Part shown: in pieces, positions 895-16,655 of the stretch
Position numbering within the stretch: the first letter of the stretch is position 1
How the letters are laid out: each line of letters begins with the position of its first letter
Virus record (IMG/VR): IMGVR_UViG_3300020172_001601
Location: 276,342 to 340,341 of that record
Strand: one strand, 5' to 3'
Length of the DNA: 64,000 nucleotides
Notes under the pieces: model-generated
Databases searched by the model: none
Told to the model about the DNA's origin: nothing
What the model saw: only the letters and a program-made list of their open reading frames with translations
Program-made: the position numbers and the translations under genes

Positions 895-1297
895 GAAGCC
901 GAAAGGCAGTGTTGGCATGAGTCTGGCTGAGGCCGACAAGTTGCTGCGAACTGCGGGATATTTGCAAGGTGATTGGGACTATTTGAAGGACTATCACTTT
1001 GCGAAGTACGTTTACTTCGACATCAACACAGTGGAAGACGTGGAAGCCTTCCTTGTGAAGCTGGACAAGGACAACGAAGACCATACGAAACCTGGGCCAT
1101 TCCGATGGGGCTGCTCGAAGGCGAAGGGCATTCGGTCCTATTTGAAGAATGAAACATGGAAGAAGGACGAAACTTGGCTAAGGGCAGCAATATCCCACAA
1201 TCGTCGCATCATTTGTTCCTGCCATGAGGGTGGGTCATATAAGCGACGGGATGAACTGCCGATTGGTCATCAAGAGAGGCCGTGGGGGATGAAGTAG
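860..1297 (+). CDS. hypothetical protein
   Basis: AGGAG RBS then ATG 860; the stop is the repeat TAG. Confidence 0.8.
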   Translation: MASPWNVVELVEKPKGSVGMSLAEADKLLRTAGYLQGDWDYLKDYHFAKYVYFDINTVEDVEAFLVKLDKDNEDHTKPGPFRWGCSKAKGIRSYLKNETWKKDETWLRAAISHNRRIICSCHEGGSYKRRDELPIGHQERPWGMK

Positions 1298-1349
1298 GTC
1301 CAGTGTACCCTAGCTGGTGTTGAGAGAACGAACTCGAACTGGAGAAATC

Positions 1350-2060
1350 ATGAAAGAACTCGAAGCTGCGTTGAACGAAGAGTTGGCGAAGGTGCTGGGT
1401 GCAAAGCACAACTGGATGGGCGTGATTGCCGGGGTTGCCGGTCGCCGAGCCAGTGAGTTTGCCCGGACGAAGAACGGTTTGCTGGAAGACGTTGTGACCG
1501 ACGTGACTGGCGACATCATTCTTCAGGCGAAGGAAGGCAAGCTGGCGGGTGCGGTGATTCGTGCCAAGGAAGCATCCCATACGGATGAAGAACTGGTGGA
1601 GAACTTACGGCACGTCGTCATGAAGGCGGCGTTCTACCGGGTGAGTGATGCCATGAAGTGGCGCTATCGCAGCGGCACTCAGTTCAGCCAGATCAGTGCT
1701 GAGAATGACTTCTCCGAGACTGTGGAAGCTCGCCCGGAAACCGAAACCGACTTGACCTATTACACGGACCTGTTGGTGAATGAGTTGGAAGTGATGGCGA
1801 CTGCTGCCGACTGGAAGCACAATCGCACCGGGAACCCCAGCTATCCGAAGCAGGCGAAGCGGTTACGGAAGTCCAAGGAAATGGTGCCGGATCGGGTCGA
1901 GGGGATGGCGTTGAAGGATTTGATGGAGAAGTACAGCGTCGGCAGCAAGGGCGGGATGCAACAGCATCTTGACGACATTGGGCAGGCACTTGCCCGTGTT
2001 GCCGGTCGGCTGGGTGATCCTACCTTGGTTCGAGGGACCAAGGGGATCGAGGTTGCTTAG
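1350..2060 (+). CDS. putative sigma-70/ECF-like sigma factor
   Basis: Region-2-like LEDVVTDV...LRHVVMKAAFYRVSDAMKWRYR and region-4 HTH-like RVEGMALKDLMEKYSVGSKGGMQQHL; GGAG RBS; the stop is the repeat TAG. Confidence 0.55.
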   Translation: MKELEAALNEELAKVLGAKHNWMGVIAGVAGRRASEFARTKNGLLEDVVTDVTGDIILQAKEGKLAGAVIRAKEASHTDEELVENLRHVVMKAAFYRVSDAMKWRYRSGTQFSQISAENDFSETVEARPETETDLTYYTDLLVNELEVMATAADWKHNRTGNPSYPKQAKRLRKSKEMVPDRVEGMALKDLMEKYSVGSKGGMQQHLDDIGQALARVAGRLGDPTLVRGTKGIEVA

Positions 2061-2114
2061 GTCCAGTGTACCCTAGTGGGTGTAACAACCCACTAGACTT
2101 TGCGAGGGAATCAA

Positions 2115-2399
2115 ATGCCAAAAGGTCAATTGCCAAAAGATCAAATTGTATATCAGGTCGTCACTAAAGGTGGCGGCGTTGATGGTCGGGACCATACTGA
2201 CAAGGGCGGCAACATCAAGTTCGCATCCTTTGATCGTGCCGAAGCTGAGAAGCAAGTCACGGCATGGGATGACCTGAAGTTGGTTGCCATGAGTGGCAAA
2301 GAATTGCTGGCCCTTAAAAAGAAGGTCTTGGCAAAGTTGGACGGTGTTGAAAAGCTGGTGCTTGAGTTGCCCGCAACGGTGCGGACGAACAATTGGTAG
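2115..2399 (+). CDS. hypothetical protein
   Basis: GAGGG RBS; the stop is the repeat TAG. Confidence 0.75.
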   Translation: MPKGQLPKDQIVYQVVTKGGGVDGRDHTDKGGNIKFASFDRAEAEKQVTAWDDLKLVAMSGKELLALKKKVLAKLDGVEKLVLELPATVRTNNW

Positions 2400-2455
2400 G
2401 TCCAGTGTACCCTAGTGGGTGTAACAGCCCACTGGACTTTGCGAGGAAGTGAACC

Positions 2456-2782
2456 ATGCGATTGAGATATGACTATTCAACAAAGATGTGCCGTGACCGA
2501 TTCGCAAGGATCGAGAAACTCGGCAAGATCAAGTTGGTGCGGGGCTATCGCTACTTTGGCCGGTACAACACGAGCCATGAAGCGGTGCTAGTTGTCGGAG
2601 AGAACGGCACTGCACGCTTCGGCGGGTTGTTGTGGGGTTATGGTGGCGAAGGTCCACGGGGATTGCAGGAACTATTGTTGAAGCTGAATGTGCCAGCGGC
2701 ACAAGCTGAAGCGATTGCTTTCTCAACACCCCGGAAGGATGAGATCGGCGAAGACTGGCGGCTGGTGCTGCCGGTCAACTAG
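2456..2782 (+). CDS. hypothetical protein (WGYGGEGP motif)
   Basis: GAGG RBS; the stop is the repeat TAG. Confidence 0.8.
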   Translation: MRLRYDYSTKMCRDRFARIEKLGKIKLVRGYRYFGRYNTSHEAVLVVGENGTARFGGLLWGYGGEGPRGLQELLLKLNVPAAQAEAIAFSTPRKDEIGEDWRLVLPVN

Positions 2783-2844
2783 GTCCAGTGTACCCTAGTG
2801 GGTGTGCTGGTGAGTGTTTCAAAACCCTGTTTCGGAGAGATCGA

Positions 2845-3111
2845 ATGAGCAAGTCAAGTGCAGTTGTGGTTGTTGGTCGTGGCCGTCCTGAGCAGTACAG
2901 CGCCGGATTCATCCGTGCCTTCAAGGTGATCGTGCGGAAGCACGGTTTGCTGGCGGGTCGGGAGTTCATCAACGCCAACGGCGTGACGGTCGGCGGGAAG
3001 CATCGGGACGTGAGCATCAGCTTGCCGACCCTGAGCAAGTACGTCAAACGTGATGAAGTCGGTGGCAAGGCCGTGCCTCTCTTCCGTGGTCGTCCTACGA
3101 AGGCAGCGTAA
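2845..3111 (+). CDS. small basic protein with two AT-hook-like RGRP motifs
   Basis: GRGRP near the N-terminus and RGRPTK at the C-terminus; GGAG RBS. Confidence 0.7.
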   Translation: MSKSSAVVVVGRGRPEQYSAGFIRAFKVIVRKHGLLAGREFINANGVTVGGKHRDVSISLPTLSKYVKRDEVGGKAVPLFRGRPTKAA

Positions 3112-3266
3112 CCTTCGGGTATGCGGGGCAGGGAATGGTCCCTGCCCTATAGGGTGCTTGGCCTAGCCGAGCAATAGCAATACCCAAATGAGAATCACTG
3201 GGCGGCGTTTAGGTCTAATGTACCCTAGAGGGTGTTGAACACAACATCCTTGAATGCGAGGAAATC

Positions 3267-4091
3267 ATGAGTGGATTTGCAGTCGGAACGTATGTTGGCC
3301 CGGCTGGTGTTCGTCGGCTGTCTTATGAGGACGGGCTGGCGAAGCTGAAGGGAAAAGACCAGAAGAAGTTGGAAAACAACACCTATCTGGTGAAGGTGGA
3401 TGACAAGACGCTGGGCGTGAAACTTCACAATACCATCGTCGTCTACATCTTCAAGAGCGGGGTGTACCAACTGGACACGGGCGGTTGGCGTACCGTGACC
3501 TCAAAGGACCGCATCAACCGATATGGTCCAGCGACGGTGCATCAGAAGAACAACATTTGGTACATCGGTGACGGCATCTATGAGGATGGCGTCCGGGTCA
3601 ATGCTGAAGGCAAGGTGTTGACGCCGCAACGTGGGGTCAAGGTGGTCGAAGCGAAGAAACGCAAGCTGGACCGCATGGTGTTGAAATACATCAAGGGGTT
3701 CGGGGAGCATGTGATTCGCAACGGGTTGCAAGTGGATAAAGCTGACAAGCCCACCGAGCAATCGCCGTGGAAGGTCGTGGAGTTAGTTGAAGGCCCCAAG
3801 CCTATTGCTCCGGGGCCGGGAGACTGTTGGGCGTGTTACTTCGGTATCACGTCAGACGATCCCCTGAAAGAGCCACTAGGGGTCGAGCATCTGCTTGAGC
3901 ATATGCTCGAAGCATACTTCGTCCCCAGCTTACTCTGGAAGGCGATTGTGGCGAATGGGTATCAAAACCCCGGCTTCATCTGGCATAGCATTGCCAGCGA
4001 TGCCCGGCGTGGCGAAAGCCGGTTCCTAAGTCGTGTCCTGACTGCCTACTTCCGAAAGCGGAAACCGGCACTGTTGGACTTGATGGAATAA
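3267..4091 (+). CDS. hypothetical phage protein
   Basis: 274-aa ORF, GAGG RBS, followed by a hairpin. Confidence 0.85.
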   Translation: MSGFAVGTYVGPAGVRRLSYEDGLAKLKGKDQKKLENNTYLVKVDDKTLGVKLHNTIVVYIFKSGVYQLDTGGWRTVTSKDRINRYGPATVHQKNNIWYIGDGIYEDGVRVNAEGKVLTPQRGVKVVEAKKRKLDRMVLKYIKGFGEHVIRNGLQVDKADKPTEQSPWKVVELVEGPKPIAPGPGDCWACYFGITSDDPLKEPLGVEHLLEHMLEAYFVPSLLWKAIVANGYQNPGFIWHSIASDARRGESRFLSRVLTAYFRKRKPALLDLME

Positions 4092-4097
4092 AAAACA

Positions 4098-4140
4098 GGA
4101 ACCCGCCATGAACTGAATCATGTGCGGGTTCTCTTGATTT
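4098..4140 (+). terminator. hairpin / putative terminator
   Basis: GAACCCGC...GCGGGTTC followed by TCTTGATTT. Confidence 0.5.
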
Positions 4141-4165
4141 ACAACTTGTGAAAGGCTGGTGGACA

Positions 4166-4465
4166 ATGAACGCTGTTGGATTGAAGAACTTTACTGAACA
4201 GGTGATAAACTCGCCTGAACCCGTGCTGGTTGACTTCTGGGCAAGTTACTGCGCTCCATGCCGGGCGTTAAAGCCGATCCTGAATGAAGTGTCAGCGACG
4301 GGGGCCAAGGTTGTGACGGTGGACATAACCGAGGAACCTGAACTGACTGCCCACTACGGCATCACTGCAATTCCTACGTTGGTCGTCTTCAAGGGCGGGC
4401 AACCGGGCCAGCGGGTTGTCGGGGTGAAGAAGAAGGACGAACTTCTGCAACTCATCAGTGCCTAA
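4166..4465 (+). CDS. trxA: thioredoxin
   Basis: VLVDFWASYCAPC active site, cis-Pro motif AIPTL, 99 aa. Confidence 0.9.
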   Translation: MNAVGLKNFTEQVINSPEPVLVDFWASYCAPCRALKPILNEVSATGAKVVTVDITEEPELTAHYGITAIPTLVVFKGGQPGQRVVGVKKKDELLQLISA

Positions 4466-4547
4466 ACCGTGTGCCGCCTTCGGGCGGCAACACCTTGCGA
4501 AGTCTAGTGTACCCTACGGGGTGTTCCAAGAAAGAAGAGGAGCTACT

Positions 4548-5153
4548 GTGAATGAGCTTGCGATTGCACGCCCCGGAAGTCTTGATCCCCGAACCCGTGT
4601 TCGTCACGGCAGAGAACGTGAACGGCAGATCGCCGTTGCGTTGAAGGATCAAGTGGGCCTCCCCATTACTGATGCCACTGAGTTCGAGGACAAAGAACGC
4701 AAGGTTGACCGATGGATCGCCTATCCTTCGGGCCGAGTTGCCCTTCAGATCAAATACCGAGAAGTCGGGGAAGACCTTCTGTTCGAGGTCTACGACAAGT
4801 TCTTCGGTTGGGATGATCCGAAGAACAAGCTGGGCCGGGATATGTTCGGCGATGCCAAGGAGTACGCCGTGCTGCTGGCTGACCGTCATACCGTCGTGAT
4901 GGTTCCGACACAGCTTGCCAAGGATACCGTCGCCAAGATGACGGAGAAGGCACGCAAAGAAGGTTTCACGCATGGAGCGGTGAGTTCAACTCTCCGCTAC
5001 TATGTTCACGGCCTGAAGCTGGAATTGAAGGTCCAGCGTGATCCCGGCGACGGACGCCAGAAGATGGTGGCATACATCCCCGCCAGCTACTTCGTGGCCG
5101 AGGCTCAAGCCAAGGTTTACCAAGTGGCACTGCCGAAGAAGTGGCAATCGTAG
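4548..5153 (+). CDS. putative PD-(D/E)XK-family nuclease
   Basis: G.E.E helix, KVD...LQIK motif; GTG start after GAGGAG; the stop is the repeat TAG. Confidence 0.55.
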   Translation: MNELAIARPGSLDPRTRVRHGRERERQIAVALKDQVGLPITDATEFEDKERKVDRWIAYPSGRVALQIKYREVGEDLLFEVYDKFFGWDDPKNKLGRDMFGDAKEYAVLLADRHTVVMVPTQLAKDTVAKMTEKARKEGFTHGAVSSTLRYYVHGLKLELKVQRDPGDGRQKMVAYIPASYFVAEAQAKVYQVALPKKWQS

Positions 5154-5206
5154 CTCCAGTGTACCCTATGGGGTGTGAAGACAATATTGCACCCCATAGG
5201 GAGATG

Positions 5207-5431
5207 ATGATGAGCATTGAACGACAACTTGTGAAGGGAGTAACGACGACTGATGTTGCCGAAGTCGTCAAGGTCAATGAGTGCATTCGCTACATTGAAT
5301 CTTGCGGCTGGTTGTTGAAGCAACGTGCCAGGGGCTATTACTACTTTCGCAACGAAAACGCCAATGAAGGTCAGCGAGACATGACTTTTTCCTTGGCAGA
5401 ACTTCGGGAGGCATACCACAATGGATGGTAA
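5207..5431 (+). CDS. hypothetical protein
   Basis: GGGAG RBS after the repeat at 5151. Confidence 0.65.
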   Translation: MMSIERQLVKGVTTTDVAEVVKVNECIRYIESCGWLLKQRARGYYYFRNENANEGQRDMTFSLAELREAYHNGW

Positions 5432-5627
5432 AGTCAAAATAAGTCACAACTATTGGTGGGAAAACGCAGTGTATTACAGGCGTTCCATCTGCGGCGGCAA
5501 TATTCAGGTCTGGAACGGTCGAATATGGACTGATGCTGCCGAGTCCTGACTTATACTGACTATTGCATACCCTTCTCCATAGGGAGTATGGGGAAGAAAG
5601 TCAGGTCTATTGTACCCTAGCCGGTGT

Positions 5628-5930
5628 AATCGCAAATTACAACACCCAGCACGGGTGGAACGCCGAGAGCCACAGGAGTAAGCACAGAAAGCATCCTCGC
5701 TGCGAAAACAATCGAGGATCGACCCGGAATAAGCCGGTCAGACAGAGTGTGAAGGCAAGAGGGTAAGCCCCTCCCACAATATATCACTCTGAATCAGTGT
5801 GGCCACACTGAGTCTGATCGAACGAAGAAGGGCAGTGCCGAAACGACTGGACGGGCGAAAGTCAGTCACTTGCTGTTGCACAGTGCATCGAAGACCGAAG
5901 GGGACGCCCTTCGGTTTTTCTTTTTTCATT
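5628..5930 (+). ncRNA. candidate structured non-coding RNA filling one repeat unit
   Basis: No RBS-led ORF; nested stems (ATCCTCG/CGAGGAT, CAGAGTG/CACTCTG, TCAGAC/GTCTGA, 18-bp palindrome 5794-5811); ends in a terminator. Confidence 0.5.
5895..5927 (+). terminator. intrinsic terminator
   Basis: ACCGAAGGG-ACG-CCCTTCGGT plus T tract. Confidence 0.85.
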
Positions 5931-5984
5931 TTGTTTAGGTCTATTGTACCCTAGCTGGCACAACCCCTAACGAAAGGCAATGCG

Positions 5985-6173
5985 ATGAACGAACAAGAAT
6001 GGCTGGAAGCATTCAATGCCGAGTTCCTGCGTAAAACCGGCATCACATGGGCAGACGGTGGGCTGGAAGATCAGGACGCCATCAATCGCTACTTCCCGGA
6101 AGACGTGAAAGACGCTGTTCTCCAGCACATGGAGAAATACGACTTGGACGACGTGACCCAACTGTGGGCATAG
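5985..6173 (+). CDS. small acidic hypothetical protein
   Basis: The stop is the repeat TAG. Confidence 0.75.
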   Translation: MNEQEWLEAFNAEFLRKTGITWADGGLEDQDAINRYFPEDVKDAVLQHMEKYDLDDVTQLWA

Positions 6174-6192
6174 GTCCAGTGTACCCTATTGG

Positions 6193-6324
6193 GTGTAATC
6201 GACCCGGCAACGCCCGAAAGATTCTAGGCAAGTACGGCGTAACCGTGACATTCCGATCATCCTGTTCACCGGCCTGCGGGTCAAAGGGGATAGAGAGTCG
6301 GGTCGATTACATTCTTTTTCTTTT
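6193..6324 (+). ncRNA. candidate structured RNA or leader closed by a 16-bp stem
   Basis: 6193-6208 pairs with 6297-6312 (2 G-U), followed by a T tract. Confidence 0.45.
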
Positions 6325-6337
6325 AGGAGAACCTGCG

Positions 6338-6502
6338 GTGAAGAAAAAATACCTTATTGCTCTGCCTTCTTTCCCTAATTCCAAGGGATTCAATCATCGA
6401 ACCATTCTTGTCAGTGCAACCGACAAGAACGATGCCGTTAGCCTTGCCCGGCATTTGCGTCCGGGTGAAAACATTGGCGACATCAAGGAAGTGAACTACT
6501 AG
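6338..6502 (+). CDS. small hypothetical protein
   Basis: AGGAG RBS, GTG start; the stop is the repeat TAG. Confidence 0.65.
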   Translation: MKKKYLIALPSFPNSKGFNHRTILVSATDKNDAVSLARHLRPGENIGDIKEVNY

Positions 6503-6558
6503 GTCCAGTGTACCCTAGTGGGTGTAACGATCACTCAACCCCTGCGAAAGAAACGACA

Positions 6559-6990
6559 ATGGACAACCTCACGAAACTTGCGATTTCCAAGGCTCTGGAA
6601 AAGGACACGAAGAACTTCAAGGCCACGCCGGGAGTTCACGACATCGACACCACGATCACCCTGCGAGTCAAAGGCACGGTGAAGAAGGGTGCGGATTCGG
6701 ATTACACGCCGACCGTGGACATTCCGCTCCTGCCGACCTTGGCACTCGTCATGGAGAAGGCTGGCTTCATGCGGGAACGGGCAAAGGAATTGCTGATCGA
6801 AGCAATGACGGAAGCCCTCGAACTCAGCACCAAGGGCGAAGAGTTCGTTGCCGACCGTGTGAAGAACATCGACGAAGCGATGGCGCACGTCCGGGAAGTC
6901 ACCGGGGCCTTGCCGAAGAAGACCAAGAGCGGGGCAACGAACGTCACCGTGACGGTCGAAGAAGTCGCTCCGGTCGAAGTCGGTGCCTAA
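6559..6990 (+). CDS. hypothetical protein
   Basis: 143 aa, strong codon bias, followed by a terminator. Confidence 0.85.
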   Translation: MDNLTKLAISKALEKDTKNFKATPGVHDIDTTITLRVKGTVKKGADSDYTPTVDIPLLPTLALVMEKAGFMRERAKELLIEAMTEALELSTKGEEFVADRVKNIDEAMAHVREVTGALPKKTKSGATNVTVTVEEVAPVEVGA

Positions 6991-6998
6991 CACTGACC

Positions 6999-7034
6999 GC
7001 ACGGCAACACTGACAATGTTGCCGTGCTTTTTGT
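6999..7034 (+). terminator. intrinsic terminator
   Basis: GCACGGCAACA...TGTTGCCGTGC plus T tract. Confidence 0.8.
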
Positions 7035-10531: not shown

Positions 10532-10585
10532 GTCCAGTGTACCCTAGTGGGTGTAACGAACAACCTCAACACGGAGAACTCTGCG

Positions 10586-10816
10586 ATGGCTATTACGCTG
10601 ACCCCTTCCTATGGTCGTGACTACAAGAACGGCAAAGAAGTCCAAGAAGCCTGGGACGCTGGCAAGGACTTCACGATCAACTCCATCGGCCACCCGGACG
10701 ATGGGCGGCAGATCAACAAGCAGGACGCCGAACGTGAGGGCGGCACCTTCAACATCCGGTACAAAAAACTGACCCAGATCAAGGTCATCAAGGTCAAGAA
10801 GGTCGCTGCGGCTTAG
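10586..10816 (+). CDS. hypothetical protein (LTPSYGRDYK motif)
   Basis: GGAG RBS; the stop is the repeat TAG. Confidence 0.85.
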   Translation: MAITLTPSYGRDYKNGKEVQEAWDAGKDFTINSIGHPDDGRQINKQDAEREGGTFNIRYKKLTQIKVIKVKKVAAA

Positions 10817-10842
10817 GTCCAGTGTACCTTACACAGTGTAAC

Positions 10843-11053
10843 GCCTCCCAAACATCGGCCTTGGGCAAGCCAATCAATCAGAATAAAGGAACCCCTTCCC
10901 ATGAATGTCTGAAGTCCGCTAACTCCCCGGCGTAGTCATCCACGTTAGAGCGGGGCGGGACTGCAAAGCGATGGCCGCACGTCAGCAATGGGCAGCATTG
11001 TGCTGGCTGACGTGTGAATGAAGTGCCTCCCAAACATTGGCCTTGGGCAAGCC
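10843..11053 (+). repeat. pair of 29-bp direct repeats in a non-coding unit
   Basis: GCCTCCCAAACAT(C/T)GGCCTTGGGCAAGCC at 10843-10871 and 11025-11053. Confidence 0.9.
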
Positions 11054-11067
11054 GAAAGCAAATGCGT

Positions 11068-11100
11068 AGGGCAGGACCAACCTGCCCTTTTTTTGTTTTT
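11068..11100 (+). terminator. intrinsic terminator
   Basis: AGGGCAGG-ACCAA-CCTGCCCT plus T tract. Confidence 0.85.
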
Positions 11101-11149
11101 GTTTGTGTAGGTCTATTGTACCCTAGAGGGTGTAACAAGCGAACAACAT

Positions 11150-11287
11150 GGCGGCGTAGCTCAACTGGCTAGAGCAACCATCATTATCGTAGCGATTGAT
11201 CGGGGGTCCACGGTCAATGCGGCCAACGTGTGTACAGCGTTGGTTTGAGAGGATGGGAAGACGGGGGTTCGATGCCCTCCGCTGTCT
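11150..11287 (+). ncRNA. tRNA-like RNA with the anticodon loop replaced by a ~70-nt insert
   Basis: Acceptor GGCGGCG/CGCTGTC, TA, D arm GCTC-AACTGGCTA-GAGC, stem CCATC/GATGG, 5-nt variable loop, T arm GGGGG-TTCGATG-CCCTC; no encoded CCA. Confidence 0.8.
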
Positions 11288-11402
11288 GCTTACACTGTAG
11301 GGCATTTGCCCGAACAACGAGGCGTCAGAACACGCCTACAACCCCGAAAGGGGAGAGAGTGTAAGGTAGCCGTAGTGTACCCTAGTGGGCAGGAGAACAA
11401 CA

Positions 11403-11561
11403 ATGCGAAAAACTGAAGGGGCAACCAAAGCCCACGCCTCTGTCGGGTATCACAAACACCTTCGACCATTCGGCAAGCGACTGGCGAACAAAGCCACTCG
11501 CAAGAATGGCAAGCGTAGCACCAGTGTACCCTATGGGGCAGGAGACAAACATGGAAATTGA
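11403..11561 (+). CDS. small basic protein
   Basis: AGGAG RBS; MRKTEGATKAHASVGYHKHLRPFGKRLANK...; reads through the repeat at 11516; below the ORF-track cut-off. Confidence 0.55.
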   Translation: MRKTEGATKAHASVGYHKHLRPFGKRLANKATRKNGKRSTSVPYGAGDKHGN

Positions 11562-11922
11562 AGACGTGCGAAATACCCGATCCATGAGAATGGACCCGGA
11601 AAGCCCTGCGGAATACGACGAGATGGACGCCATCACCGCTGGCCCCAATGGTATGAAATTGATGCCAGTGTTCAGCGGTGAGATGTTTCAACAGTCCGTT
11701 GCCTATCCCGTCATCGTGGAAGCATGGGACAAGAAGAACAGCGGACGCCACAAACGCCGATGGGAAGCGACATTCACCCAAGCCGAACGGAACAAGATCA
11801 GCCGGTATTATGGCCGGTTTTACCGCTGGTATCTGGTCAGCGGCACGCCCAAACGTGTGTCACTGCAATTGAACACCTTGACCCTCCTGCAAAGGGCAGT
11901 GAACTTCTTCGCTGAATGTTAG
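11551..11922 (+). CDS. hypothetical protein
   Basis: AGGAG RBS; the stop is the repeat TAG. Confidence 0.8.
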   Translation: MEIEDVRNTRSMRMDPESPAEYDEMDAITAGPNGMKLMPVFSGEMFQQSVAYPVIVEAWDKKNSGRHKRRWEATFTQAERNKISRYYGRFYRWYLVSGTPKRVSLQLNTLTLLQRAVNFFAEC

Positions 11923-11943
11923 GGCTAGTGTACCCTAGAGGGC

Positions 11944-12237
11944 ATGATGAAAGACGCATACGGAAACGATCAAGTATATCTGGTCCAGCCCACAACTCTG
12001 GACTATGAGATCAGCTATGGTGGCGATGGTGTCAAAACATGCCAAGAGGGACGCTATCGACACTATTTCACTGCCAGTGCTGGCGGTTTGTCGGGTAGCA
12101 TTAGAATTCAATTGAACCGAGTCAGCGCCGAACGGTTTGCTGCCTATAACGGCCTGCGGTTGATAACCGACGTTGAACGTGAAGAAATTCAAGAAAGGTG
12201 GAGCGTCAGAGTGCCGGATTGGTCCAGTGTACCCTAG
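11944..12237 (+). CDS. hypothetical protein
   Basis: Starts 6 nt after the 18-bp repeat core; ends WSSVP* inside the next repeat. Confidence 0.65.
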   Translation: MMKDAYGNDQVYLVQPTTLDYEISYGGDGVKTCQEGRYRHYFTASAGGLSGSIRIQLNRVSAERFAAYNGLRLITDVEREEIQERWSVRVPDWSSVP

Positions 12238-12274
12238 ACGGTGTAACGATCACTCAACCCTGCGGAGAATGACA

Positions 12275-12526
12275 ATGGTTCAATTGAAAGTCGTGGCTGT
12301 GTCGAGCAACCACAATAGTTTCGGCCTGCGAAACATGATCCTCATCGGGGACAATGGCGAAGGCTGGCAAGCTGCGGCCAATGACCTGAACGTGAAGCCG
12401 AAGGATACCATCCTGCGGATACCCGAAGGGCAGGACATTCCCACGTTCCTGACGCTGCAATCTTTCGAGATTCCTTCACAACTGGCCGACCCGCCTGCCG
12501 AACTATTGAAAGAAGTTTGGGGCTAG
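12275..12526 (+). CDS. hypothetical protein
   Basis: GGAG RBS; the stop is the repeat TAG. Confidence 0.8.
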   Translation: MVQLKVVAVSSNHNSFGLRNMILIGDNGEGWQAAANDLNVKPKDTILRIPEGQDIPTFLTLQSFEIPSQLADPPAELLKEVWG

Positions 12527-12584
12527 GTCCAGTGTACCCTAGAGGGTGTAAGGAACACTTCAGTCCTCTGCGAAAGGCAATGCG

Positions 12585-12920
12585 ATGTTGAGCCACAAAA
12601 TTGCGATTTACATTCCTTCCACTGTCAACGGCAATCAGCCCGCCCCGGTTGATATGATCGAACGGTGGGTGCGGGCCAGCAAGATCAAGCTGGCCAACCT
12701 GTTCGGTGGGTTTACGACCTACAACGGGCAAGGGGGATGGTACTCGCCCGAACACGGTTTGATCGAAGAGAACGTGATTATCGTTCAAGCGTTCACCGAT
12801 CAAGAGGGGCTGACCAAACTGGACAAAGTGAACGAACTGGCGAAGGAAATCGCCAGCGACATGGGCCAGGAAATGGTGTCGGTCGAAGTCGATGGAACAC
12901 TCAACTTCGTGACAGCGTAA
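12585..12920 (+). CDS. DUF3574-like / PII-fold-like hypothetical protein
   Basis: FGGFTTYNGQGGW...E...GQEMV pattern. Confidence 0.55.
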   Translation: MLSHKIAIYIPSTVNGNQPAPVDMIERWVRASKIKLANLFGGFTTYNGQGGWYSPEHGLIEENVIIVQAFTDQEGLTKLDKVNELAKEIASDMGQEMVSVEVDGTLNFVTA

Positions 12921-12925
12921 GGCAG

Positions 12926-12955
12926 GGACGGGCAGTAATGCCCGTCTTTTTTTCT
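12926..12955 (+). terminator. intrinsic terminator
   Basis: GACGGGCA-GTAA-TGCCCGTC plus T tract. Confidence 0.85.
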
Positions 12956-12988
12956 GAGTTTGTGTAGGTCTATTGTACCCTAGAGAAC

Positions 12989-13255
12989 ATGAGAGTCAGC
13001 AACACATTATTGATTTCCCTGTTTTATGAACCGGGAACGTCACATATTGCCGGAATTGAAAACCGAGCAATACAAGCGATGGAATTGGGGATGATTTCAG
13101 AACTCCCCAAGATCACTGTGGCGAAAAGTGAGAAGACACCATTCTGGCACTTGAAGCTGGAAGTCAAGGATGAAGATCGGCCATTCTGGTTCGGTTTTTA
13201 CTTAGGGAAAGACTTCTGCATCAACAATCGACCAATCACTGTCGGCTGTGATTAG
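12989..13255 (+). CDS. hypothetical protein
   Basis: Starts 6 nt after the repeat core; the stop is the repeat TAG. Confidence 0.7.
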   Translation: MRVSNTLLISLFYEPGTSHIAGIENRAIQAMELGMISELPKITVAKSEKTPFWHLKLEVKDEDRPFWFGFYLGKDFCINNRPITVGCD

Positions 13256-13309
13256 GTCCAGTGTACCCTAGAGGGTGTAAGGAACACTTAACCCCCTGCG
13301 AGATACGCC

Positions 13310-13495
13310 ATGCCGAAGAAAATGGATCATGCCGCCTACCAACGTGGTCTGCGGTCGAAGTCGGTTGCTCAACTCCAATTTATTGCGAAGGATGCCAACG
13401 AAGCCGCCACGGTTAACCCGCAAGGCGAAAACGCTGGCTACTACGCCGACGAAGTGCATTATGCACTCGCCGAACTCAAACGTCGTCAAGGATGA
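13310..13495 (+). CDS. small hypothetical protein
   Basis: 61 aa after the repeat at 13253. Confidence 0.75.
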   Translation: MPKKMDHAAYQRGLRSKSVAQLQFIAKDANEAATVNPQGENAGYYADEVHYALAELKRRQG

Positions 13496-13671
13496 AAAAC
13501 ATGAAACTGGCAAGCATAGCGGTCGCATTCCTCCTGTTGGCGGGATGCGCCGCTCCTCCGAGACATTGGGAAGCTCCCCGTGAGCATTACCACAAGGAAT
13601 TAAGCGTCGAAGTCCGGGAAAGCGGCGATGGCCGTCCCCAAGTCGTTGCTACGTTCAAAATCACCAACTAG
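13492..13671 (+). CDS. small lipoprotein
   Basis: MKNMKLASIAVAFLLLAG-C lipobox; ATGA overlap; the stop is the repeat TAG; 59 aa, absent from the ORF track. Confidence 0.75.
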   Translation: MKNMKLASIAVAFLLLAGCAAPPRHWEAPREHYHKELSVEVRESGDGRPQVVATFKITN

Positions 13672-13725
13672 GTCCAGTGTACCCTATATGGTGTGAAGGA
13701 CACCAACAAAAAGGGAAACCAAGCC

Positions 13726-13911
13726 ATGCACACAACGACCGCACGAAAGGACAACAAGAAAACAACAATCGTTCTGCCGCCGCTTCCACCGTGGCAAGTG
13801 GCGAAGGGACACCAACAACACCGTGGCGGGGCAGGCACTCACGCCGACCGCCGCACGAACCGTCAACGGACACGAGCCGCCCAACAACGGGCAGCAGTGT
13901 CAGATGACTGA
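13726..13911 (+). CDS. small basic protein
   Basis: Arg-rich AGTHADRRTNRQRTR. Confidence 0.65.
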   Translation: MHTTTARKDNKKTTIVLPPLPPWQVAKGHQQHRGGAGTHADRRTNRQRTRAAQQRAAVSDD

Positions 13912-14093
13912 AAGGCACCATCATGTGCAAACTAAACTCTAAGGCAAGGAGGCTGCAAAAGGCAAGACGTTGGGCTGAAAAGATGCTGATCGACCTGAAG
14001 ACGTGGCCCGGTGGACTTGAAGACTTCGCCGAAGCACTTAGGTCCAGTGTACCCTATATGGTGTGAAGAACACTCAACCCTGCGAGATCAATC

Positions 14094-14321
14094 ATGAAGA
14101 CCGAACCGAAGACGTTCCGCTTGGGCAGCAACGACATGGTTTCTGCCCCCGGCATCCTCAAGTGGGCCATGAATGGCTACAAATTCAAACGTGACCGCAA
14201 GAAGATGGTCAACGTGATGAAAGCGTGGGAGGGCCTGACCGATGCCCAATGGGGCAAGGTGCTGGCGGGTGAAATCCCCCACACCATCGAAGGCGATGTC
14301 GTGGTAATCACCATCGAATGA
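14094..14321 (+). CDS. hypothetical protein
   Basis: ORF between a repeat and a terminator. Confidence 0.8.
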   Translation: MKTEPKTFRLGSNDMVSAPGILKWAMNGYKFKRDRKKMVNVMKAWEGLTDAQWGKVLAGEIPHTIEGDVVVITIE

Positions 14322-14325
14322 CAAC

Positions 14326-14356
14326 AAAGGGCAGCAAGTCGCTGCCCTTTTCTTTT
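14326..14356 (+). terminator. intrinsic terminator (same hairpin as at 16169)
   Basis: AAAGGGCAGC-AAGTC-GCTGCCCTTT plus T tract. Confidence 0.85.
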
Positions 14357-14414
14357 ATGTTTTTGTGTAGGTCTATTGTACCCTAGTGGGTGTCACACAA
14401 AGGAGACAATTGCG

Positions 14415-14762
14415 ATGATTACCAAAGTATCTGCTGACACGTTTCACAATGATGTTTACCACCACGATGGCCCTGTCGTCGTGACCTTCGGCTATACGGG
14501 CTGCGGCCCATGCCGTTCCTTGCAACCCAGCCTTGAGAAGCTGGCCGAAACTGGCGTCAAGGTCGTCAAGGTCGATATTGTCGATGACCCTGACATTGCC
14601 ACGCACTTCGGCATCAGCAGCGTGCCGACAACCCTGTTCTTCGCCCGTGGCGAACCACGATTGTCGTTCAATGGCGTTGCCAACGTCAAGAAGCTGCAAG
14701 CACTGCTGGCTGAAGCCGTGGCCGATGGCGAGAAGTCGCCCGCCGACCACGCCCATGCCTAG
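14415..14762 (+). CDS. thioredoxin-family protein
   Basis: VVVTFGYTGCGPC, SSVPT cis-Pro motif; the stop is the repeat TAG. Confidence 0.88.
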   Translation: MITKVSADTFHNDVYHHDGPVVVTFGYTGCGPCRSLQPSLEKLAETGVKVVKVDIVDDPDIATHFGISSVPTTLFFARGEPRLSFNGVANVKKLQALLAEAVADGEKSPADHAHA

Positions 14763-14816
14763 CCCTAGTGTACCCTATAGGGTGTGATGGAACGAAACCT
14801 TCAACGGAGAACTGCG

Positions 14817-15056
14817 ATGGCTAACGGTTGGCATGAAGACTTTGAAGACGAAACCTTCCCGCCCGAACTGCACGAGCAGGAAGACTGGAGCGAACTCGAA
14901 GAAGACTTCGACGACGAAGAGTTCGACGATGACGAATTCGAGGACGATGACGGCGAACTGGCCCGTGACCTGATCCTTGAACGTCAGGAACTCGAAGACT
15001 TCGAGGGCCTTGATCCCTTCGAGGATCGCTACGACTACGAAGGCGACGGCTTCTAA
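14817..15056 (+). CDS. extremely acidic small protein
   Basis: 38 of 79 residues are D/E, no Lys; GGAG RBS. Confidence 0.8.
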   Translation: MANGWHEDFEDETFPPELHEQEDWSELEEDFDDEEFDDDEFEDDDGELARDLILERQELEDFEGLDPFEDRYDYEGDGF

Positions 15057-15065
15057 GGGCAACGA

Positions 15066-15100
15066 AGGACAGGGAAAGCCTCCCTGTCCTTTTTCTTTCT
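15066..15100 (+). terminator. intrinsic terminator
   Basis: AGGACAGGGA-AAGCC-TCCCTGTCCT plus T tract. Confidence 0.85.
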
Positions 15101-15172
15101 GAGTTTGTGTAGGTCTATTGTACCCTAGTGGGTGTGTCGAAGAGAACGAAACCTGTCCAACGGAGAACTGCA

Positions 15173-15358
15173 ATGGTGACTGCGACCATCGAAGGCAACG
15201 AACTCGTGATTCGCCTTCCCCTCAACACGCCCCGGCCCAGCGCCACGGGCAAGACGCTCGTGGTTGCCACGAGCAGCGGCAACAAGGCCACCGAAGCCGA
15301 AGTCAACGGGCAAAAGGTAGTCGTCGGCGTCAACGCCTACATCTACCCGCCCAAATAG
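15173..15358 (+). CDS. small hypothetical protein (SATGKTLVVAT motif)
   Basis: GGAG RBS, strong codon bias. Confidence 0.8.
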   Translation: MVTATIEGNELVIRLPLNTPRPSATGKTLVVATSSGNKATEAEVNGQKVVVGVNAYIYPPK

Positions 15359-15438
15359 TCAACAAAAGGCAACACTAGGGTACGTCCAGTGTACCCTAGT
15401 GTGTGTTGGGATCAATCACCTTCACTCAAGGATCGACC

Positions 15439-15684
15439 ATGCGAGTATTGGCTAAGACGTTCGGCTGGCTTGTCGTCAGTGGGCTTATCATCTTCATCAG
15501 CAACCTGAGCGCCGGTGTCGATTGGAAAGTCGCCCTGATCGGTGCGGCTGTTGCGAAGATCGGCACGACCATTGCCTACTTCTTCTACGAAATCGGCTTC
15601 GAGAAGGCGTGGAAACGTCAGCCAAAGGCAACGACGGTCACGGCAACAACGGCATCGGCAACGCCATGCCCTTGCCCGGCTTAG
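15439..15684 (+). CDS. DUF2061-like membrane protein
   Basis: R..AKT..W, two hydrophobic segments, YFFYE...W; the stop is the repeat TAG. Confidence 0.6.
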   Translation: MRVLAKTFGWLVVSGLIIFISNLSAGVDWKVALIGAAVAKIGTTIAYFFYEIGFEKAWKRQPKATTVTATTASATPCPCPA

Positions 15685-15752
15685 GGCTAGTGTACCCTAG
15701 AGGGTGTCCAACACGGACGAACGACAACCCCCTGCGAATGAGGAACTGAGTT

Positions 15753-16160
15753 ATGGCCACTACTGAAGTCAAGCTGGTATCGGAAATCATCGAAGCTGTC
15801 CCCGGCGTCAAGCGTGCGTTCCACGTCTTCACGCCAGCCCTTCAGCATCGCCTTGAGAACAACGCCAGCAACCTGCCGGTGATGGCCCTGCGGTCTTCAA
15901 TCCACAACTACGGCAAGATGAAGCTGTACGCTCGCATCGAATGCCTTGGGCCGTCCAGCCTTGACCCGCTGTTCGGCAACCCACTGCCCGGCACGGGTGG
16001 CCGTGGCGTGGCAATCATGTTCACCGAATTCCCCCTTCGGGTATGGTATCCCGAAGGGCAAAAGCCCCCGGTCGTTGACACGCCGGACGGACGCAACCCG
16101 AAGGACATACTTGAGGAAGTCAAGCTCAAGTATGAACTCGCCTTCCACGACGATTTCTAA
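15753..16160 (+). CDS. hypothetical protein
   Basis: GAGGA RBS, followed by a terminator. Confidence 0.85.
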   Translation: MATTEVKLVSEIIEAVPGVKRAFHVFTPALQHRLENNASNLPVMALRSSIHNYGKMKLYARIECLGPSSLDPLFGNPLPGTGGRGVAIMFTEFPLRVWYPEGQKPPVVDTPDGRNPKDILEEVKLKYELAFHDDF

Positions 16161-16168
16161 TCGTCAGG

Positions 16169-16200
16169 AAAGGGCAGCAAGTCGCTGCCCTTTCTTTTTG
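16169..16200 (+). terminator. intrinsic terminator
   Basis: AAAGGGCAGC-AAGTC-GCTGCCCTTT plus T tract. Confidence 0.85.
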
Positions 16201-16514
16201 TTTATGTTTGTGTAGGTCTATTGTACCCTAGAGGGCAAGGAGATCGGCACATGACCTTTCGAGAGTGGTATCGGATGACCGAACGTGAGATTCGGTGGAA
16301 TCGCAGTTTCCTGTATCGTGTCTTCAACAAGATCGGACTCGCATGATTCGCAAAGCTCTGGCCTTCGTGGTCAACGTCTTCAACTTCCTCGTTCCTGCGA
16401 ACCAAGGGCCGCAACCGACGCCGCCCAACTACTTCGGCCCCTGCCCGTAGTAGGTCAAGTGTACCCTAGTGAGTGCGGGCAATGTCGCCCGCCTCACTCT
16501 TGGGGTTTTACAAA

Positions 16515-16655
16515 ATGAAAAAGAAACATCGCAACGACAAGAACCACGGGCGCAACGGCTGGGTCGGTGGCAACCCACGCTATGCGGGCAAGGGATTCAA
16601 GAAGGGCGACCGAGCCAAGGCAAAGGCCGAAGCCCGTAGGTCCAGTGTACCCTAG
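16515..16655 (+). CDS. small basic protein
   Basis: Lys/Arg-rich; ends RSSVP* inside a repeat. Confidence 0.55.
   Translation: MKKKHRNDKNHGRNGWVGGNPRYAGKGFKKGDRAKAKAEARRSSVP

What the first reader, a model, noticed from the sequence alone, without database searches (positions are those of the whole stretch)
1295..16655. The element supplies the stop codon of the upstream gene
Seen: the first three bases (TAG) are the in-frame stop of at least 18 ORFs (ending 1297, 2060, 2399, 2782, 5153, 6173, 6502, 8327, 8584, 9072, 10531, 10816, 11922, 12526, 13255, 13671, 14762, 15684). Others enter in a second frame and gain a repeat-encoded tail (SSVP* at 12237 and 16655, RSSVPLMV* at 7673, RSSVPYMV* at 14066). 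Outside the array most stops are TAA. Established: stop codons overlapping the recombination site are common in integron cassettes. Inference: genes were joined to the element precisely at their 3' ends, through capture/recombination or strong compaction.
Basis: partly seen in the sequence, partly recalled or inferred. Interest (0 to 1): 0.7.

Follow-up and report, generated by a model that had tools for sequence, protein, structure and literature searches.

The report
Gene-boundary repeat that supplies stop codons
In a huge uncultured freshwater phage, a 26-base signal placed in front of nearly every small gene of one 28-kb region begins with TAG, and about half of the upstream genes use that TAG as their stop codon; this is a tightly packed, swappable gene-cassette layout like one known from T4-type phages, not an integron.

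Summary
The window is the last 64 kb of a 340-kb phage contig. A 26-nt motif (TAGGTCYAKTGTACCCTAGNGGGTGT) occurs 60 times on one strand within 28 kb (42 in the window) and nowhere else. All 18 listed ORF ends and all four repeat-encoded tails are as described.

ORFs running into the motif choose frames 25:6:1 (p=3e-7). Two related phage contigs give the same bias. TAG belongs to the motif: it is kept in most copies not used as a stop and is never TAA or TGA.

Most likely the motif is a phage-specific promoter-type signal. Every strong terminator in the array is followed 16-20 nt later by a copy, and copies head the array where no sigma-70 promoter exists. Its TGTACC core is conserved across a large clade of huge phages. 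No RNA data could be obtained, so promoter function remains inferred.

Related phages differ by whole cassettes bounded by the motif, as with T4-type PeSL elements. Orthologous genes also switch between sharing the TAG and having 20-84 nt spacers, so local compaction contributes. Integron-type capture is not supported, because no recombinase or attC structure was found. I rate it a new variant of a known kind, of moderate interest.

The parts
1..16850 (+). Window part of the cassette array. The whole array spans genome 265,224-293,150, i.e. window -11,117 to 16,809. It holds small + strand genes, most preceded by the 26-nt motif. GC is 53% against 47% for the rest of the window.
22..47 (+). 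Motif copy; its TAG (22-24) stops a 69-aa ORF that starts upstream of the window.
1295..1320 (+). Motif copy; its TAG stops ORF 860..1297 (145 aa).
2058..2083 (+). Motif copy; its TAG stops ORF 1350..2060 (236 aa). In relative G1 the same gene takes its TAG from the copy equivalent to 2397, because cassette 2058-2396 is absent there.
2397..2422 (+). Motif copy; its TAG stops ORF 2115..2399 (94 aa).
2780..2805 (+). Motif copy; its TAG stops ORF 2456..2782 (108 aa). The G3 orthologue has its own TGA plus a 21-nt spacer, and the motif there begins TCG.
5151..5176 (+). Motif copy; its TAG stops ORF 4548(4458)..5153 (201-231 aa).
6171..6196 (+). Motif copy; its TAG stops ORF 5985..6173 (62 aa; the G1 orthologue ends the same way).
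6500..6525 (+). Motif copy; its TAG stops ORF 6047..6502 (151 aa; start uncertain).
8325..8350 (+). Motif copy; its TAG stops ORF 8133..8327 (64 aa; this cassette is absent from G1).
8582..8607 (+). Motif copy; its TAG stops ORF 8381..8584 (67 aa).
9070..9095 (+). Motif copy; its TAG stops ORF 8635..9072 (145 aa). In G1 the equivalent copy stops an unrelated 134-aa ORF. Run X6 lacks 8609-9065.
10529..10554 (+). Motif copy; its TAG stops ORF 10304..10531 (75 aa; this cassette is absent from G1).
10814..10839 (+). Motif copy with a degenerate core (TACCTTAC); its TAG stops ORF 10586..10816 (76 aa).
11920..11945 (+). Motif copy; its TAG stops ORF 11551..11922 (123 aa).
12524..12549 (+). Motif copy; its TAG stops ORF 12275..12526 (83 aa).
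13253..13278 (+). Motif copy; its TAG stops ORF 12989..13255 (88 aa). In G1 the equivalent copy stops an unrelated 57-aa ORF.
13669..13694 (+). Motif copy; its TAG stops ORF 13492..13671 (59 aa; the G1 and G3 orthologues end the same way).
14760..14785 (+). Motif copy; its TAG stops ORF 14415..14762 (115 aa; this cassette is absent from G1).
15682..15707 (+). Motif copy; its TAG stops ORF 15439..15684 (81 aa).
7646..7673 (+). Motif copy entered in the second frame by ORF 7440(7389)..7673, giving the repeat-encoded tail RSSVPLMV*.
12219..12244 (+). Motif copy (starts TTG) entered in the second frame by ORF 11947..12237; tail SSVP*, stop at motif bases 17-19.
14039..14066 (+). Motif copy entered in the second frame by ORF 13923..14066; tail RSSVPYMV*.
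16637..16662 (+). Last full + strand copy, entered in the second frame by ORF 16473..16655 (tail SSVP*). A partial copy follows at about 16655-16680.
822..847 (+). Motif copy whose second-frame stop is lost (CCCTCA). ORF 643..894 reads through it and overlaps the next gene's start at 860.
9393..9418 (+). Motif copy starting TAC. ORF 9108..9401 ends at the TAG formed by motif bases 7-9.
5890..5961 (+). Terminator-plus-motif module: intrinsic terminator 5890-5919 with T-run, then a post-terminator-subtype copy (TAGGTCTATTG...) at 5936.
6999..7070 (+). Terminator 6999-7027, then a motif copy at 7045 (T at position 7).
11068..11133 (+). Terminator 11068-11088, then a post-terminator-subtype copy at 11108.
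12924..12990 (+). Terminator 12924-12949, then a post-terminator-subtype copy at 12965. The next ATG is only 5 nt after motif base 19.
14326..14393 (+). Terminator 14326-14350, then a post-terminator-subtype copy at 14368.
15064..15135 (+). Terminator 15064-15092, then a post-terminator-subtype copy at 15110.
16166..16238 (+). Terminator 16166-16196, then a post-terminator-subtype copy at 16213.
3210..16476 (+). Other + strand copies that do not supply a stop: 3210, 4499, 5602, 8115 (with an inverted partner GGGTACAAAT just upstream), 9750, 10246, 11367, 11516, 15381 and 16451 (followed by a strong hairpin).
16688..16809 (-). Right edge of the array: hairpins 16688-16711 and 16715-16732, then two - strand motif copies (16730-16747 and 16792-16809) that point back into the array.

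Best explanation
The element is a 26-nt gene-boundary signal. It is most likely a promoter-type site read by host RNA polymerase redirected by a phage factor, or by a phage polymerase not present on this 69%-complete contig. It stands in front of nearly every cassette of a 28-kb accessory-gene array in a huge phage.

Its first three bases are TAG, and they are part of the signal itself. Each gene is followed directly by the next cassette's signal, and the array is under strong pressure to be compact. The shortest workable layout is therefore the last sense codon followed directly by the motif, with the motif's TAG ending translation. About half the genes have reached that state. A few enter in the second frame and gain a 5-8 residue tail. 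Almost none enter in the frame that has no stop.

The same repeats act as short patches of homology. Through them whole cassettes are lost, gained or swapped between related phages, as in T4-type PeSL elements. A gene that relies on the motif's TAG keeps a stop codon whichever cassette comes next.

Shown: the anatomy, the frame bias, the intrinsic nature of TAG, the clade-wide conservation, the motif-bounded cassette differences and the in-place switches between shared-TAG and spacer states. Inferred: promoter function, the recognising factor and homologous recombination as the exchange mechanism.
For: Anatomy:
- The information content has a sharp 5' edge exactly at the T of TAG. Bases 10-17 (TGTACCCT) are invariant, and there is no conservation upstream of base 1.
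- All 60 array copies share the orientation of the genes and lie 5-50 nt before start codons with Shine-Dalgarno sequences.

TAG is intrinsic to the motif:
- It is kept in 19/29, 12/21 and 31/36 copies that are not used as a stop in the three phages.
- It is never TAA or TGA, although TAA and TGA make up 82% of stops elsewhere.
- It is retained in relative G3, whose motif differs at bases 4-6.

Promoter-type function:
- All 7 strong + strand terminators in the window's array are followed 16-20 nt later by a copy.
- Those copies belong to a distinct subtype, which goes with a T-rich upstream region (p=4e-6).
- The first copies sit in the non-coding head of the array, after divergent genes, where no sigma-70-like promoter is found (0 against 3.8 expected).
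- A separate conventional promoter class (TTTACA-N17-TAGAAT, about 19 copies) exists elsewhere in the genome but never inside the array.
- The phage encodes 3-4 sigma-70-family proteins.
- The core TGTACC(C)T is conserved in arrays of relatives with GC from 37% to 59%.

Compaction:
- Frame bias is 25:6:1, 16:3:0 and 24:5:1, and stop-to-motif spacing is bimodal.
- In relative L038 the motif carries stops in all three frames, and they are used 14:5:3 according to the database's own gene calls.
- Orthologues switch between the shared-TAG state and the spacer state with C-termini conserved to 1-2 residues.
- Runs X4 and X6 lack 108 nt that end exactly at the 5' edge of motif 9750.

Cassette exchange:
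- Whole-cassette differences from G1 are bounded by motif copies, with breakpoint enrichment p=2e-7.
- Run X6 lacks 8609-9065, the stretch between two copies.
Against: - There is no transcript evidence. No RNA run was listed, so no transcription start is known.
- The motif fits no sigma-70 -35/-10 layout.
- No phage RNA polymerase was found (PF00940, PF00562, PF00623 and the ten largest unassigned proteins).
- Some copies have a Shine-Dalgarno sequence at motif bases 19-23 or an ATG at bases 25-30. Transcription would then have to start at or before about base 19, or those genes depend on read-through transcripts.
- Copies at both ends of the array would give only RNAs of about 40-80 nt before a terminator, and two of them point inward. 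Some copies have an inverted partner. Both features also suit a DNA-binding regulator.
- The excess of TAG sharing among variable cassettes (10/12 against 12/29, p=0.019) rests on a threshold chosen afterwards.
- The joints in the Logan contigs are mostly assembly breaks at the repeat, not proof of recombination.
Confidence: 0.6

Rival explanations
1. The motif is an operator-type DNA site, not a promoter. A phage DNA-binding protein binds every gene boundary and blocks or tunes transcription through the array, like the 'stoperators' of cluster A mycobacteriophages. Stop sharing is again a by-product of compaction.
For: - The sites are asymmetric, all in one orientation and at nearly every intergenic position.
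- The contiguous 26-bp conservation, strongest in the middle, looks like a protein-binding site.
- Some copies are paired with an inverted half-site: GGGTACAAAT upstream of 8115 and of two copies upstream of the window, and nearly all copies in L039.
- Convergent copies sit at the array's right edge.
Against: - This reading does not explain why every strong terminator is followed at a fixed 16-20 nt by a special subtype.
- It leaves the array with no promoter. None of the sigma-70-like class lies within it or at its head.
- No integrase was found that would point to a lysogenic lifestyle.
Confidence: 0.15
2. The motif acts in RNA. It would be a processing site, a 5' stabiliser or an insulator in long polycistronic transcripts, and upstream translation must end before it. 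That would select for a stop at its first bases.
For: - Bases 12-25 can form a small hairpin (TACCC/GGGTG). In several copies bases 17-26 pair with downstream sequence through compensating changes, for example at 2058, 5151 and 10246.
- Shine-Dalgarno sequences or start codons lie inside or just after the motif in some copies, so those motif bases must be transcribed.
- tRNA genes in relatives end 4-7 nt before a copy.
- ORFs rarely read into the motif beyond its first bases.
Against: - Copies follow strong terminators and head the array, where little upstream RNA should arrive.
- The primary sequence is conserved across relatives with GC of 37-59%, with no covariation in the core.
- The longer hairpins are present in only a minority of copies.
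- No Rfam family matches.
Confidence: 0.15
3. The array is integron-like, and a site-specific recombinase captures promoterless cassettes at the repeat, joining genes to it at their 3' ends.
For: - Cassette-sized differences between phages are bounded by the repeat.
- Stop codons lie inside the boundary repeat, as in many integron cassettes. That comparison rests on my own knowledge and was not checked here.
Against: - No tyrosine recombinase was found in the 340 kb.
- The 26-nt repeat lacks the paired inverted core sites and the 57-141-nt folded structure of attC.
- No common upstream promoter is present, and each cassette has its own signal.
- Orthologues change spacing in place.
- The contig is only 69% complete, so a recombinase elsewhere cannot be excluded.
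Confidence: 0.04
4. The TAG is there for conditional read-through. The phage's own two amber-suppressor tRNAs would extend or fuse the TAG-terminated array proteins at a certain stage of infection, acting as a switch.
For: - Two tRNA(CUA) genes lie at genome 182,011-182,084 and 182,708-182,778, the first 54 nt downstream of a consensus sigma-70-like promoter.
- TAG ends about half of the array genes but only 18% of the others.
Against: - Read-through tails have no conserved length, no backup stop and no excess of in-frame fusion with the next gene: about 5-6 of 31, near chance.
- There is no sign of TAG recoding anywhere in the genome.
- The timing and charging of these tRNAs are unknown.
Confidence: 0.05

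Closest known systems
PeSL (promoter-early stem-loop) cassettes of T4-type phages (Arbiol et al. 2010, PMC2839356; Comeau et al. 2014, PMC4122927)
   Same: - Short conserved composite regulatory repeats lie between small orphan genes in hypervariable regions of large myoviruses.
- Terminator-plus-promoter modules are present.
- Insertions, deletions and replacements between close relatives have their breakpoints at the repeats.
- In PeSLs too the motif is drawn as starting at the upstream gene's stop codon (figure 2 legend).
   Different: - Here the repeat is one contiguous 26-nt sequence that is not sigma-70-like, whereas the sigma-70-like promoters of this genome lie outside the array.
- The stop codon is a fixed part of the repeat and is used by about 45% of cassettes, and by up to about 75% in relative L038.
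- The stem-loop is variable and often absent.
- The host phage belongs to a different clade, with contigs of 300-670 kb.
- Neither promoter activity nor mini-circles have been tested.
Integron gene cassettes and attC sites
   Same: Both are arrays of single-gene cassettes in one orientation, bounded by a repeat that can contain the stop codon of the gene before it.
   Different: Here there is no integrase, no attC architecture and no single cassette promoter, and the repeat looks like an expression signal for the following gene. Exchange is more simply explained by homologous recombination.
Stoperators of cluster A mycobacteriophages
   Same: Many copies of an asymmetric site share one orientation relative to transcription and sit in very short intergenic spaces next to stop and start codons.
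   Different: Stoperators are spread over the whole genome of temperate phages and bind the immunity repressor. This motif is confined to one 28-kb array and is coupled to terminators. No repressor or lysogeny module was identified.
Promoters of phage single-subunit RNA polymerases (T7, T3, SP6 type)
   Same: Both have about 18 contiguous conserved bases followed by a G-rich start region (TAG|TGGG here), occur in many near-identical copies in front of genes, and sometimes carry a 5' stem-loop in the leader.
   Different: No T7-like polymerase was found on the contig. The resemblance is one of layout only, because the sequences cannot be aligned in register.

Membership tests
PeSL-type regulatory cassette | Repeated intergenic motif concentrated in a hypervariable region of small orphan genes | tested here: met
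   There are 60 copies in 28 kb and none elsewhere. The cargo proteins have almost no family matches.
PeSL-type regulatory cassette | Insertions, deletions and replacements between close relatives have their breakpoints at the motif | tested here: met
   The cassette map against G1 shows whole-cassette differences. 13 of 20 breakpoints lie at motif copies, p=2e-7.
PeSL-type regulatory cassette | Composite of a promoter and a stem-loop that terminates upstream transcription | tested here: inconclusive
   Seven terminator-plus-motif modules have a fixed spacing of 16-20 nt, but most copies have no terminator. Promoter activity was not measured.
PeSL-type regulatory cassette | The promoter matches the host sigma-70 consensus (early promoter) | tested here: not met
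   The motif has no -35/-10 layout. Sigma-70-like sites in the array do not exceed shuffled controls (8 against 9.1). The genome's TTTACA-N17-TAGAAT class lies outside the array.
PeSL-type regulatory cassette | Recombination between flanking motifs releases circular cassette DNA (mini-circles) | not testable with these tools
   This needs inverse PCR or long reads from infected cells. The Logan contigs simply break at the repeat.
Integron | An IntI-type tyrosine recombinase next to the array | tested here: not met
   PF00589 finds nothing in the 340 kb while all 14 control genomes match. The contig is 69% complete.
Integron | attC site: imperfect inverted repeats R''-L''/L'-R', 57-141 nt, folding as a single strand | tested here: not met
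   The conserved unit is 26 nt with only a 4-5 bp internal inverted repeat.
Integron | Promoterless cassettes expressed from one common promoter | tested here: inconclusive
   No common sigma-70-like promoter lies at the head of the array, and internal terminators would block a single transcript. No RNA data are available.
Stoperator-type repressor sites | A cognate repressor and a temperate lifestyle | tested here: inconclusive
   No integrase was found. The repressor was not searched for systematically.
T7-type promoter | A single-subunit RNA polymerase encoded by the phage | tested here: not met
   PF00940 gives no match, and the largest unassigned proteins belong to other families. The contig is incomplete, so this is not final.
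Stop-codon-recoded phage (TAG read as sense) | In-frame TAG inside conserved genes, with coding density rising when TAG is read through | tested here: not met
   The gain in coverage with TAG read as sense is no larger than for the TGA and TAA controls. No Pfam domain spans a TAG in five candidates. Two tRNA(CUA) genes do exist.

The most novel reading that the evidence does not exclude
The repeat is a three-in-one module that evolved in a large clade of huge phages. It would be the promoter for an as yet unidentified, non-sigma-70 transcription specificity. It would also be the universal translation stop for the preceding cassette, so that cassettes need no stop codon of their own. In one relative the motif carries stops in all three frames. 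Thirdly it would be the crossover site that makes cassettes freely exchangeable. In addition, the phage's own amber-suppressor tRNAs might later read through these TAGs and so switch off or remodel the array's proteins.
Probability: 0.12. Interest if true: 0.75.

Novelty: new variant of a known kind. Interest (0 to 1): 0.45.

Why it matters
Huge phages carry large sets of small genes of unknown function, and how those genes are expressed and exchanged is poorly understood. This array offers a clean, sequence-defined handle on that problem. One 26-nt signal marks about 60 cassettes, and its core is conserved in arrays from all four distant relatives sampled, out of a family of more than 700 related contigs.

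- It should allow automatic delimitation of accessory-gene cassettes in metagenomic huge-phage genomes.
- It points to a transcription specificity distinct from the host sigma-70 type.
- It extends the PeSL idea of regulatory repeats as engines of modular shuffling beyond T4-type phages.

For annotation there is a practical lesson. In these regions TAG stops are part of the next gene's signal, so intergenic distance is effectively negative.

Tried and rejected
- **RNA evidence:** no RNA run was listed for the array, so transcription starts could not be read.
- **Read laying on DNA runs:** most joints have short sides and reflect contigs breaking at the repeat. I used only the depth holes and two clean deletions.
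- **Phage RNA polymerase:** PF00940, PF00562 and PF00623 found nothing. The ten largest unassigned proteins turned out to be DNA polymerase III alpha, a class I tRNA synthetase, an SNF2 helicase, an NAD ligase, Ro60/TROVE, PARP, AAA ATPases and others. The three conserved ~450-aa genes beside the array and the 527-aa array protein have no PDB sequence match. The 527-aa protein folds with weak Hsp90/GHKL likeness and is not a polymerase.
- **TAG recoding:** rejected.
- **Designed read-through tails:** rejected, because the lengths are scattered and there are no backup stops.
- **Sigma-70 or ECF-type readings of the motif:** I examined these by eye. None places the invariant core in a recognised element, so I did not adopt one.
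- **Rfam:** no family matches the motif. The weak DapZ and STnc420 hits at 14279-14377 are just the terminator there.
- **Public phage genomes:** no near relative was found.
- **Literature search for the motif string:** it returned only unrelated primer sequences.
- **Relatives' large contigs:** they could not be searched for polymerases because the records are not held.
not possible, for the reasons given under the interpretation verdict.

Full report
**Context**

The window is the last 64 kb (276,342-340,341) of a single 340,341-bp IMG/VR virus contig, estimated 69% complete. DNA runs that hold it come from freshwater and sediment metagenomes. Its right-hand part encodes myovirus baseplate proteins, a tyrosyl-tRNA synthetase and a CCA-adding enzyme. 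The genome carries 52 tRNA genes. This is a huge phage. The finding concerns the left 17 kb of the window. That stretch is the end of a 28-kb array of small + strand genes, with GC of 53% against 47% for the rest.

**The observation**

- A search for TAGGTCYAKTGTACCCTA with up to 3 mismatches finds 44 copies in the window against 0.07 expected. Across the contig there are 60 + strand copies between 265,224 and 292,978 and none elsewhere.
- A position table shows a 26-nt motif, TAGGTCYAKTGTACCCTAGNGGGTGT. Bases 10-17 are invariant, and the 5' edge is sharp: information starts exactly at the T of TAG and is zero at -1, -2 and further upstream.
A 19th case sits at window 22-24.
- ORFs that run into a copy use the three frames 25:6:1 (chi-square p=3e-7).
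- Among ORFs of at least 60 aa, the stop-to-motif distance is exactly 0 in 22 cases, 4-35 nt in 1 case and 36-120 nt in 14 cases.
- With crude ORF calls, TAG ends 29 of 57 array ORFs but 78 of 437 elsewhere (p=2e-7). The whole excess comes from motif-borne TAGs.
- Outside the array TAA is only the commonest stop (43%), not the majority.

**Relatives**

Exact-pattern scans found two related virus contigs:
- **G1** (42 kb, about 92% nucleotide identity, 37 copies).
- **G3** (46 kb, 50-92% protein identity, 59 copies).

Both repeat the frame bias, 16:3:0 and 24:5:1. In G3 the motif reads TAGTGTCAGTGTACCCTAG, so bases 4-6 have changed while TAG and the core have not.

A 527-aa protein encoded inside the array has more than 700 homologues on contigs of up to 673 kb. 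Four of those contigs were fetched (L037-L040, 55-76% identity, GC 37-59%). All have arrays of small genes with the same core and different 5' flanks:

| Locus | Motif around the core | Stop sharing |
|---|---|---|
| L037 | TAGTGTCAT-TGTACCCTAG | 13 ORFs end on the TAG |
| L038 | TTGAGTAA-TGTACCCTAATGGGTGTGA | Stops in all three frames (TGA, TAA, TAA), used 14:5:3 by the database's own gene calls |
| L039 | TTAGAGATT-TGTACCCTAC, with an inverted partner upstream | None |
| L040 | CAGTAGAGT-TGTACCTGTGA | TAG used 4-5 times |

Stop sharing is therefore a feature of much of the clade and is not confined to this genome.

**Is the TAG part of the signal or merely a stop?**

It is part of the signal.
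- It is retained in 19/29, 12/21 and 31/36 copies that no ORF uses as a stop. These include every copy that follows a terminator.
- In the TAG-type motifs it is never replaced by TAA or TGA, although those two make up 82% of stops elsewhere.

Stop function alone would allow any stop codon, so the identity of the codon is dictated by the motif.

**What the motif probably is**

- All seven strong + strand intrinsic terminators in the window's array are followed 16-20 nt later by a copy.
- Those copies belong to a subtype (ATTGTACC instead of AGTGTACC) that goes with T-rich upstream sequence (p=4e-6) and is seldom used as a stop. L037, L038 and G3 have a comparable post-terminator subtype.
- The first copies lie in a non-coding head region, after divergently transcribed genes, where no sigma-70-like promoter is found.
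- Inside the array, sigma-70-like sites do not exceed chance.
- Elsewhere the genome has about 19 copies of a textbook promoter, TTTACA-N17-TAGAAT with an extended -10 TG, and none of them lies in the array.
- The phage encodes 3-4 sigma-70-family proteins but no detectable RNA polymerase.

The simplest reading is a second promoter class, read by host polymerase with a phage factor. The terminator-plus-motif units match the composite terminator/promoter definition of PeSLs (PMC2839356, PMC4122927). This is inference, because no RNA run could be listed.

Several facts keep a DNA-operator reading and an RNA-level reading alive:
- Shine-Dalgarno sequences or start codons lie within or just after the motif in a few copies.
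- Some copies have an inverted partner half-site.
- Copies at the array's two ends would give only very short transcripts, and two of them point inward.
- Variable hairpins with compensating changes begin near base 17 in some copies.

**How genes came to abut the motif**

Two processes are visible.

*Cassette exchange.*
- Against G1, shared cassettes align end to end at 81-99% identity. Cassettes 2058-2396, 8115-9069, 10246-10528, 12965-13252 and 14368-14759 are absent or replaced.
- 13 of 20 synteny breakpoints lie within -5 to +50 nt of a motif start, against 14% expected (p=2e-7).
- Run X6 has no depth over 8609-9065, the stretch between two copies.
- The copy at 9070 stops a 145-aa gene here and an unrelated 134-aa gene in G1. 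The copy at 13253 does the same for 88-aa and 57-aa genes. Gene 1350..2060 takes its TAG from different downstream cassettes in the two phages.
- Cleanly variable cassettes end on the next motif's TAG in 10 of 12 cases, against 12 of 29 shared ones (p=0.019, with a threshold chosen afterwards).

*Change in place.* Orthologues at the same position differ in state while their C-termini stay within 1-2 residues:
- Gene 2456..2782 shares the TAG here but has its own TGA plus a 21-nt spacer in G3.
- A 77-aa gene shares the TAG here but is separated from the motif by an inserted tRNA-Glu in G3.
- Three other genes show the opposite pattern.
- G3 also has spacers of 20-32 nt.
- Runs X4 and X6 lack 108 nt that end exactly at the 5' edge of motif 9750.

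Taken together, the motif's 5' edge is a hard limit, and a layout with the last codon followed directly by the motif is the most compact viable state. Frames that find a stop early in the motif are the ones that reach that state. The L038 usage of 14:5:3 follows the length of the encoded tail. Recombination within the repeats then moves cassettes without disturbing termination.

**Comparison with known systems**

- The closest is the PeSL system of T4-type phages. It shares the location, the terminator/promoter composite, the motif-bounded indels and a stop codon at the motif's start. It differs in sequence class (this motif is not sigma-70-like), in the fixed stop built into the repeat and in the phage clade.
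- Integron membership fails on the recombinase and on attC structure.
- The stoperator and T7-type promoter comparisons are resemblances only.

**Side issue: amber suppressors**

The genome has two tRNA(CUA) genes, one just downstream of a consensus promoter. I found no sign that TAG is read as sense anywhere. The read-through products of the array genes show no design. A link between these tRNAs and the TAG-rich array remains an untested possibility.

**Verdict**

The feature is a new variant of a known kind, and its mechanism of expression is still unproven.

Noticed in passing
outside the window: genome 182,011-182,084 and 182,708-182,778 (G000:C1): Two tRNA genes with anticodon CUA (amber suppressors) lie in a phage that otherwise shows standard-code coding density. 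The first sits 54 nt downstream of a consensus TTTACA-N17-TAGAAT promoter. In all the genome has 52 tRNA genes.
   Followed up: partly
window about 24,027 (- strand; genome 300,368) and about 19 sites between genome 63 kb and 254 kb: A second repeated promoter-like motif, cTTTACAa-N14-TGGTAGAAT (sigma-70 type with extended -10), lies in front of tRNA clusters and other genes and is never found inside the cassette array.
   Followed up: partly
window 16,637-16,810: The right edge of the array has an odd structure. Two + strand copies are followed by GCATAGT repeats and two hairpins. Two - strand motif copies, inside an 82%-identical 33-nt direct repeat, then point back into the array.
   Followed up: partly
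window 8,096-8,140; also L020:8,960-9,020 and nearly all copies in L039: Some copies have an inverted partial copy (GGGTACAAAT) 10-30 nt upstream, giving a palindromic pair. In those copies the first triplet is not TAG.
   Followed up: partly
L020:8,883-8,975 (genome 265,224-265,316), the head of the array: The first motif copy is followed after about 45 nt by a strong terminator and then by the next copy. If the motif is a promoter, this unit would make only a small RNA.
   Followed up: no
L014:3,255-3,326 and 3,528-3,599 (relative G3); tRNA 3' ends also abut motif copies in L038 (about 5,480-5,505) and L040 (about 9,355-9,380): tRNA genes occur as cassettes inside the arrays of relatives, ending 4-7 nt before a motif copy. 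In G3 a duplicated tRNA-Glu sits exactly between a gene's TAG and the motif.
   Followed up: partly
L020:12,294-13,877 (genome 268,635-270,218): A 527-aa protein inside the array is conserved at 55-94% identity in more than 700 metagenomic proteins, on contigs of up to 673 kb. It has an ExxxNxxD box, and its confident model (pLDDT 85) shows a weak Hsp90/GHKL-like fold.
   Followed up: partly
window 63,117-64,000: A 33-bp tandem repeat (26 copies, 85% matches) lies inside the last open reading frame and runs to the contig end. It probably explains why the assembly stops there.
   Followed up: no
window 36,073-45,411: A 3,112-aa ORF lies upstream of the baseplate genes and has no Pfam or PHROG match.
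   Followed up: no
window 6,001-12,000 as laid on run X6: Runs labelled 'organism A' (small data sets of about 280 million letters) hold a ~95% identical relative of the array at about 10x depth. This may be a culture that contains the host.
   Followed up: no
window 4,148-4,465 and 14,376-14,762: These are the only clear paralogue pair inside the array (37% identity over 95 aa). One member ends on a motif TAG, and the other has its own TAA plus a 36-nt spacer.
   Followed up: no
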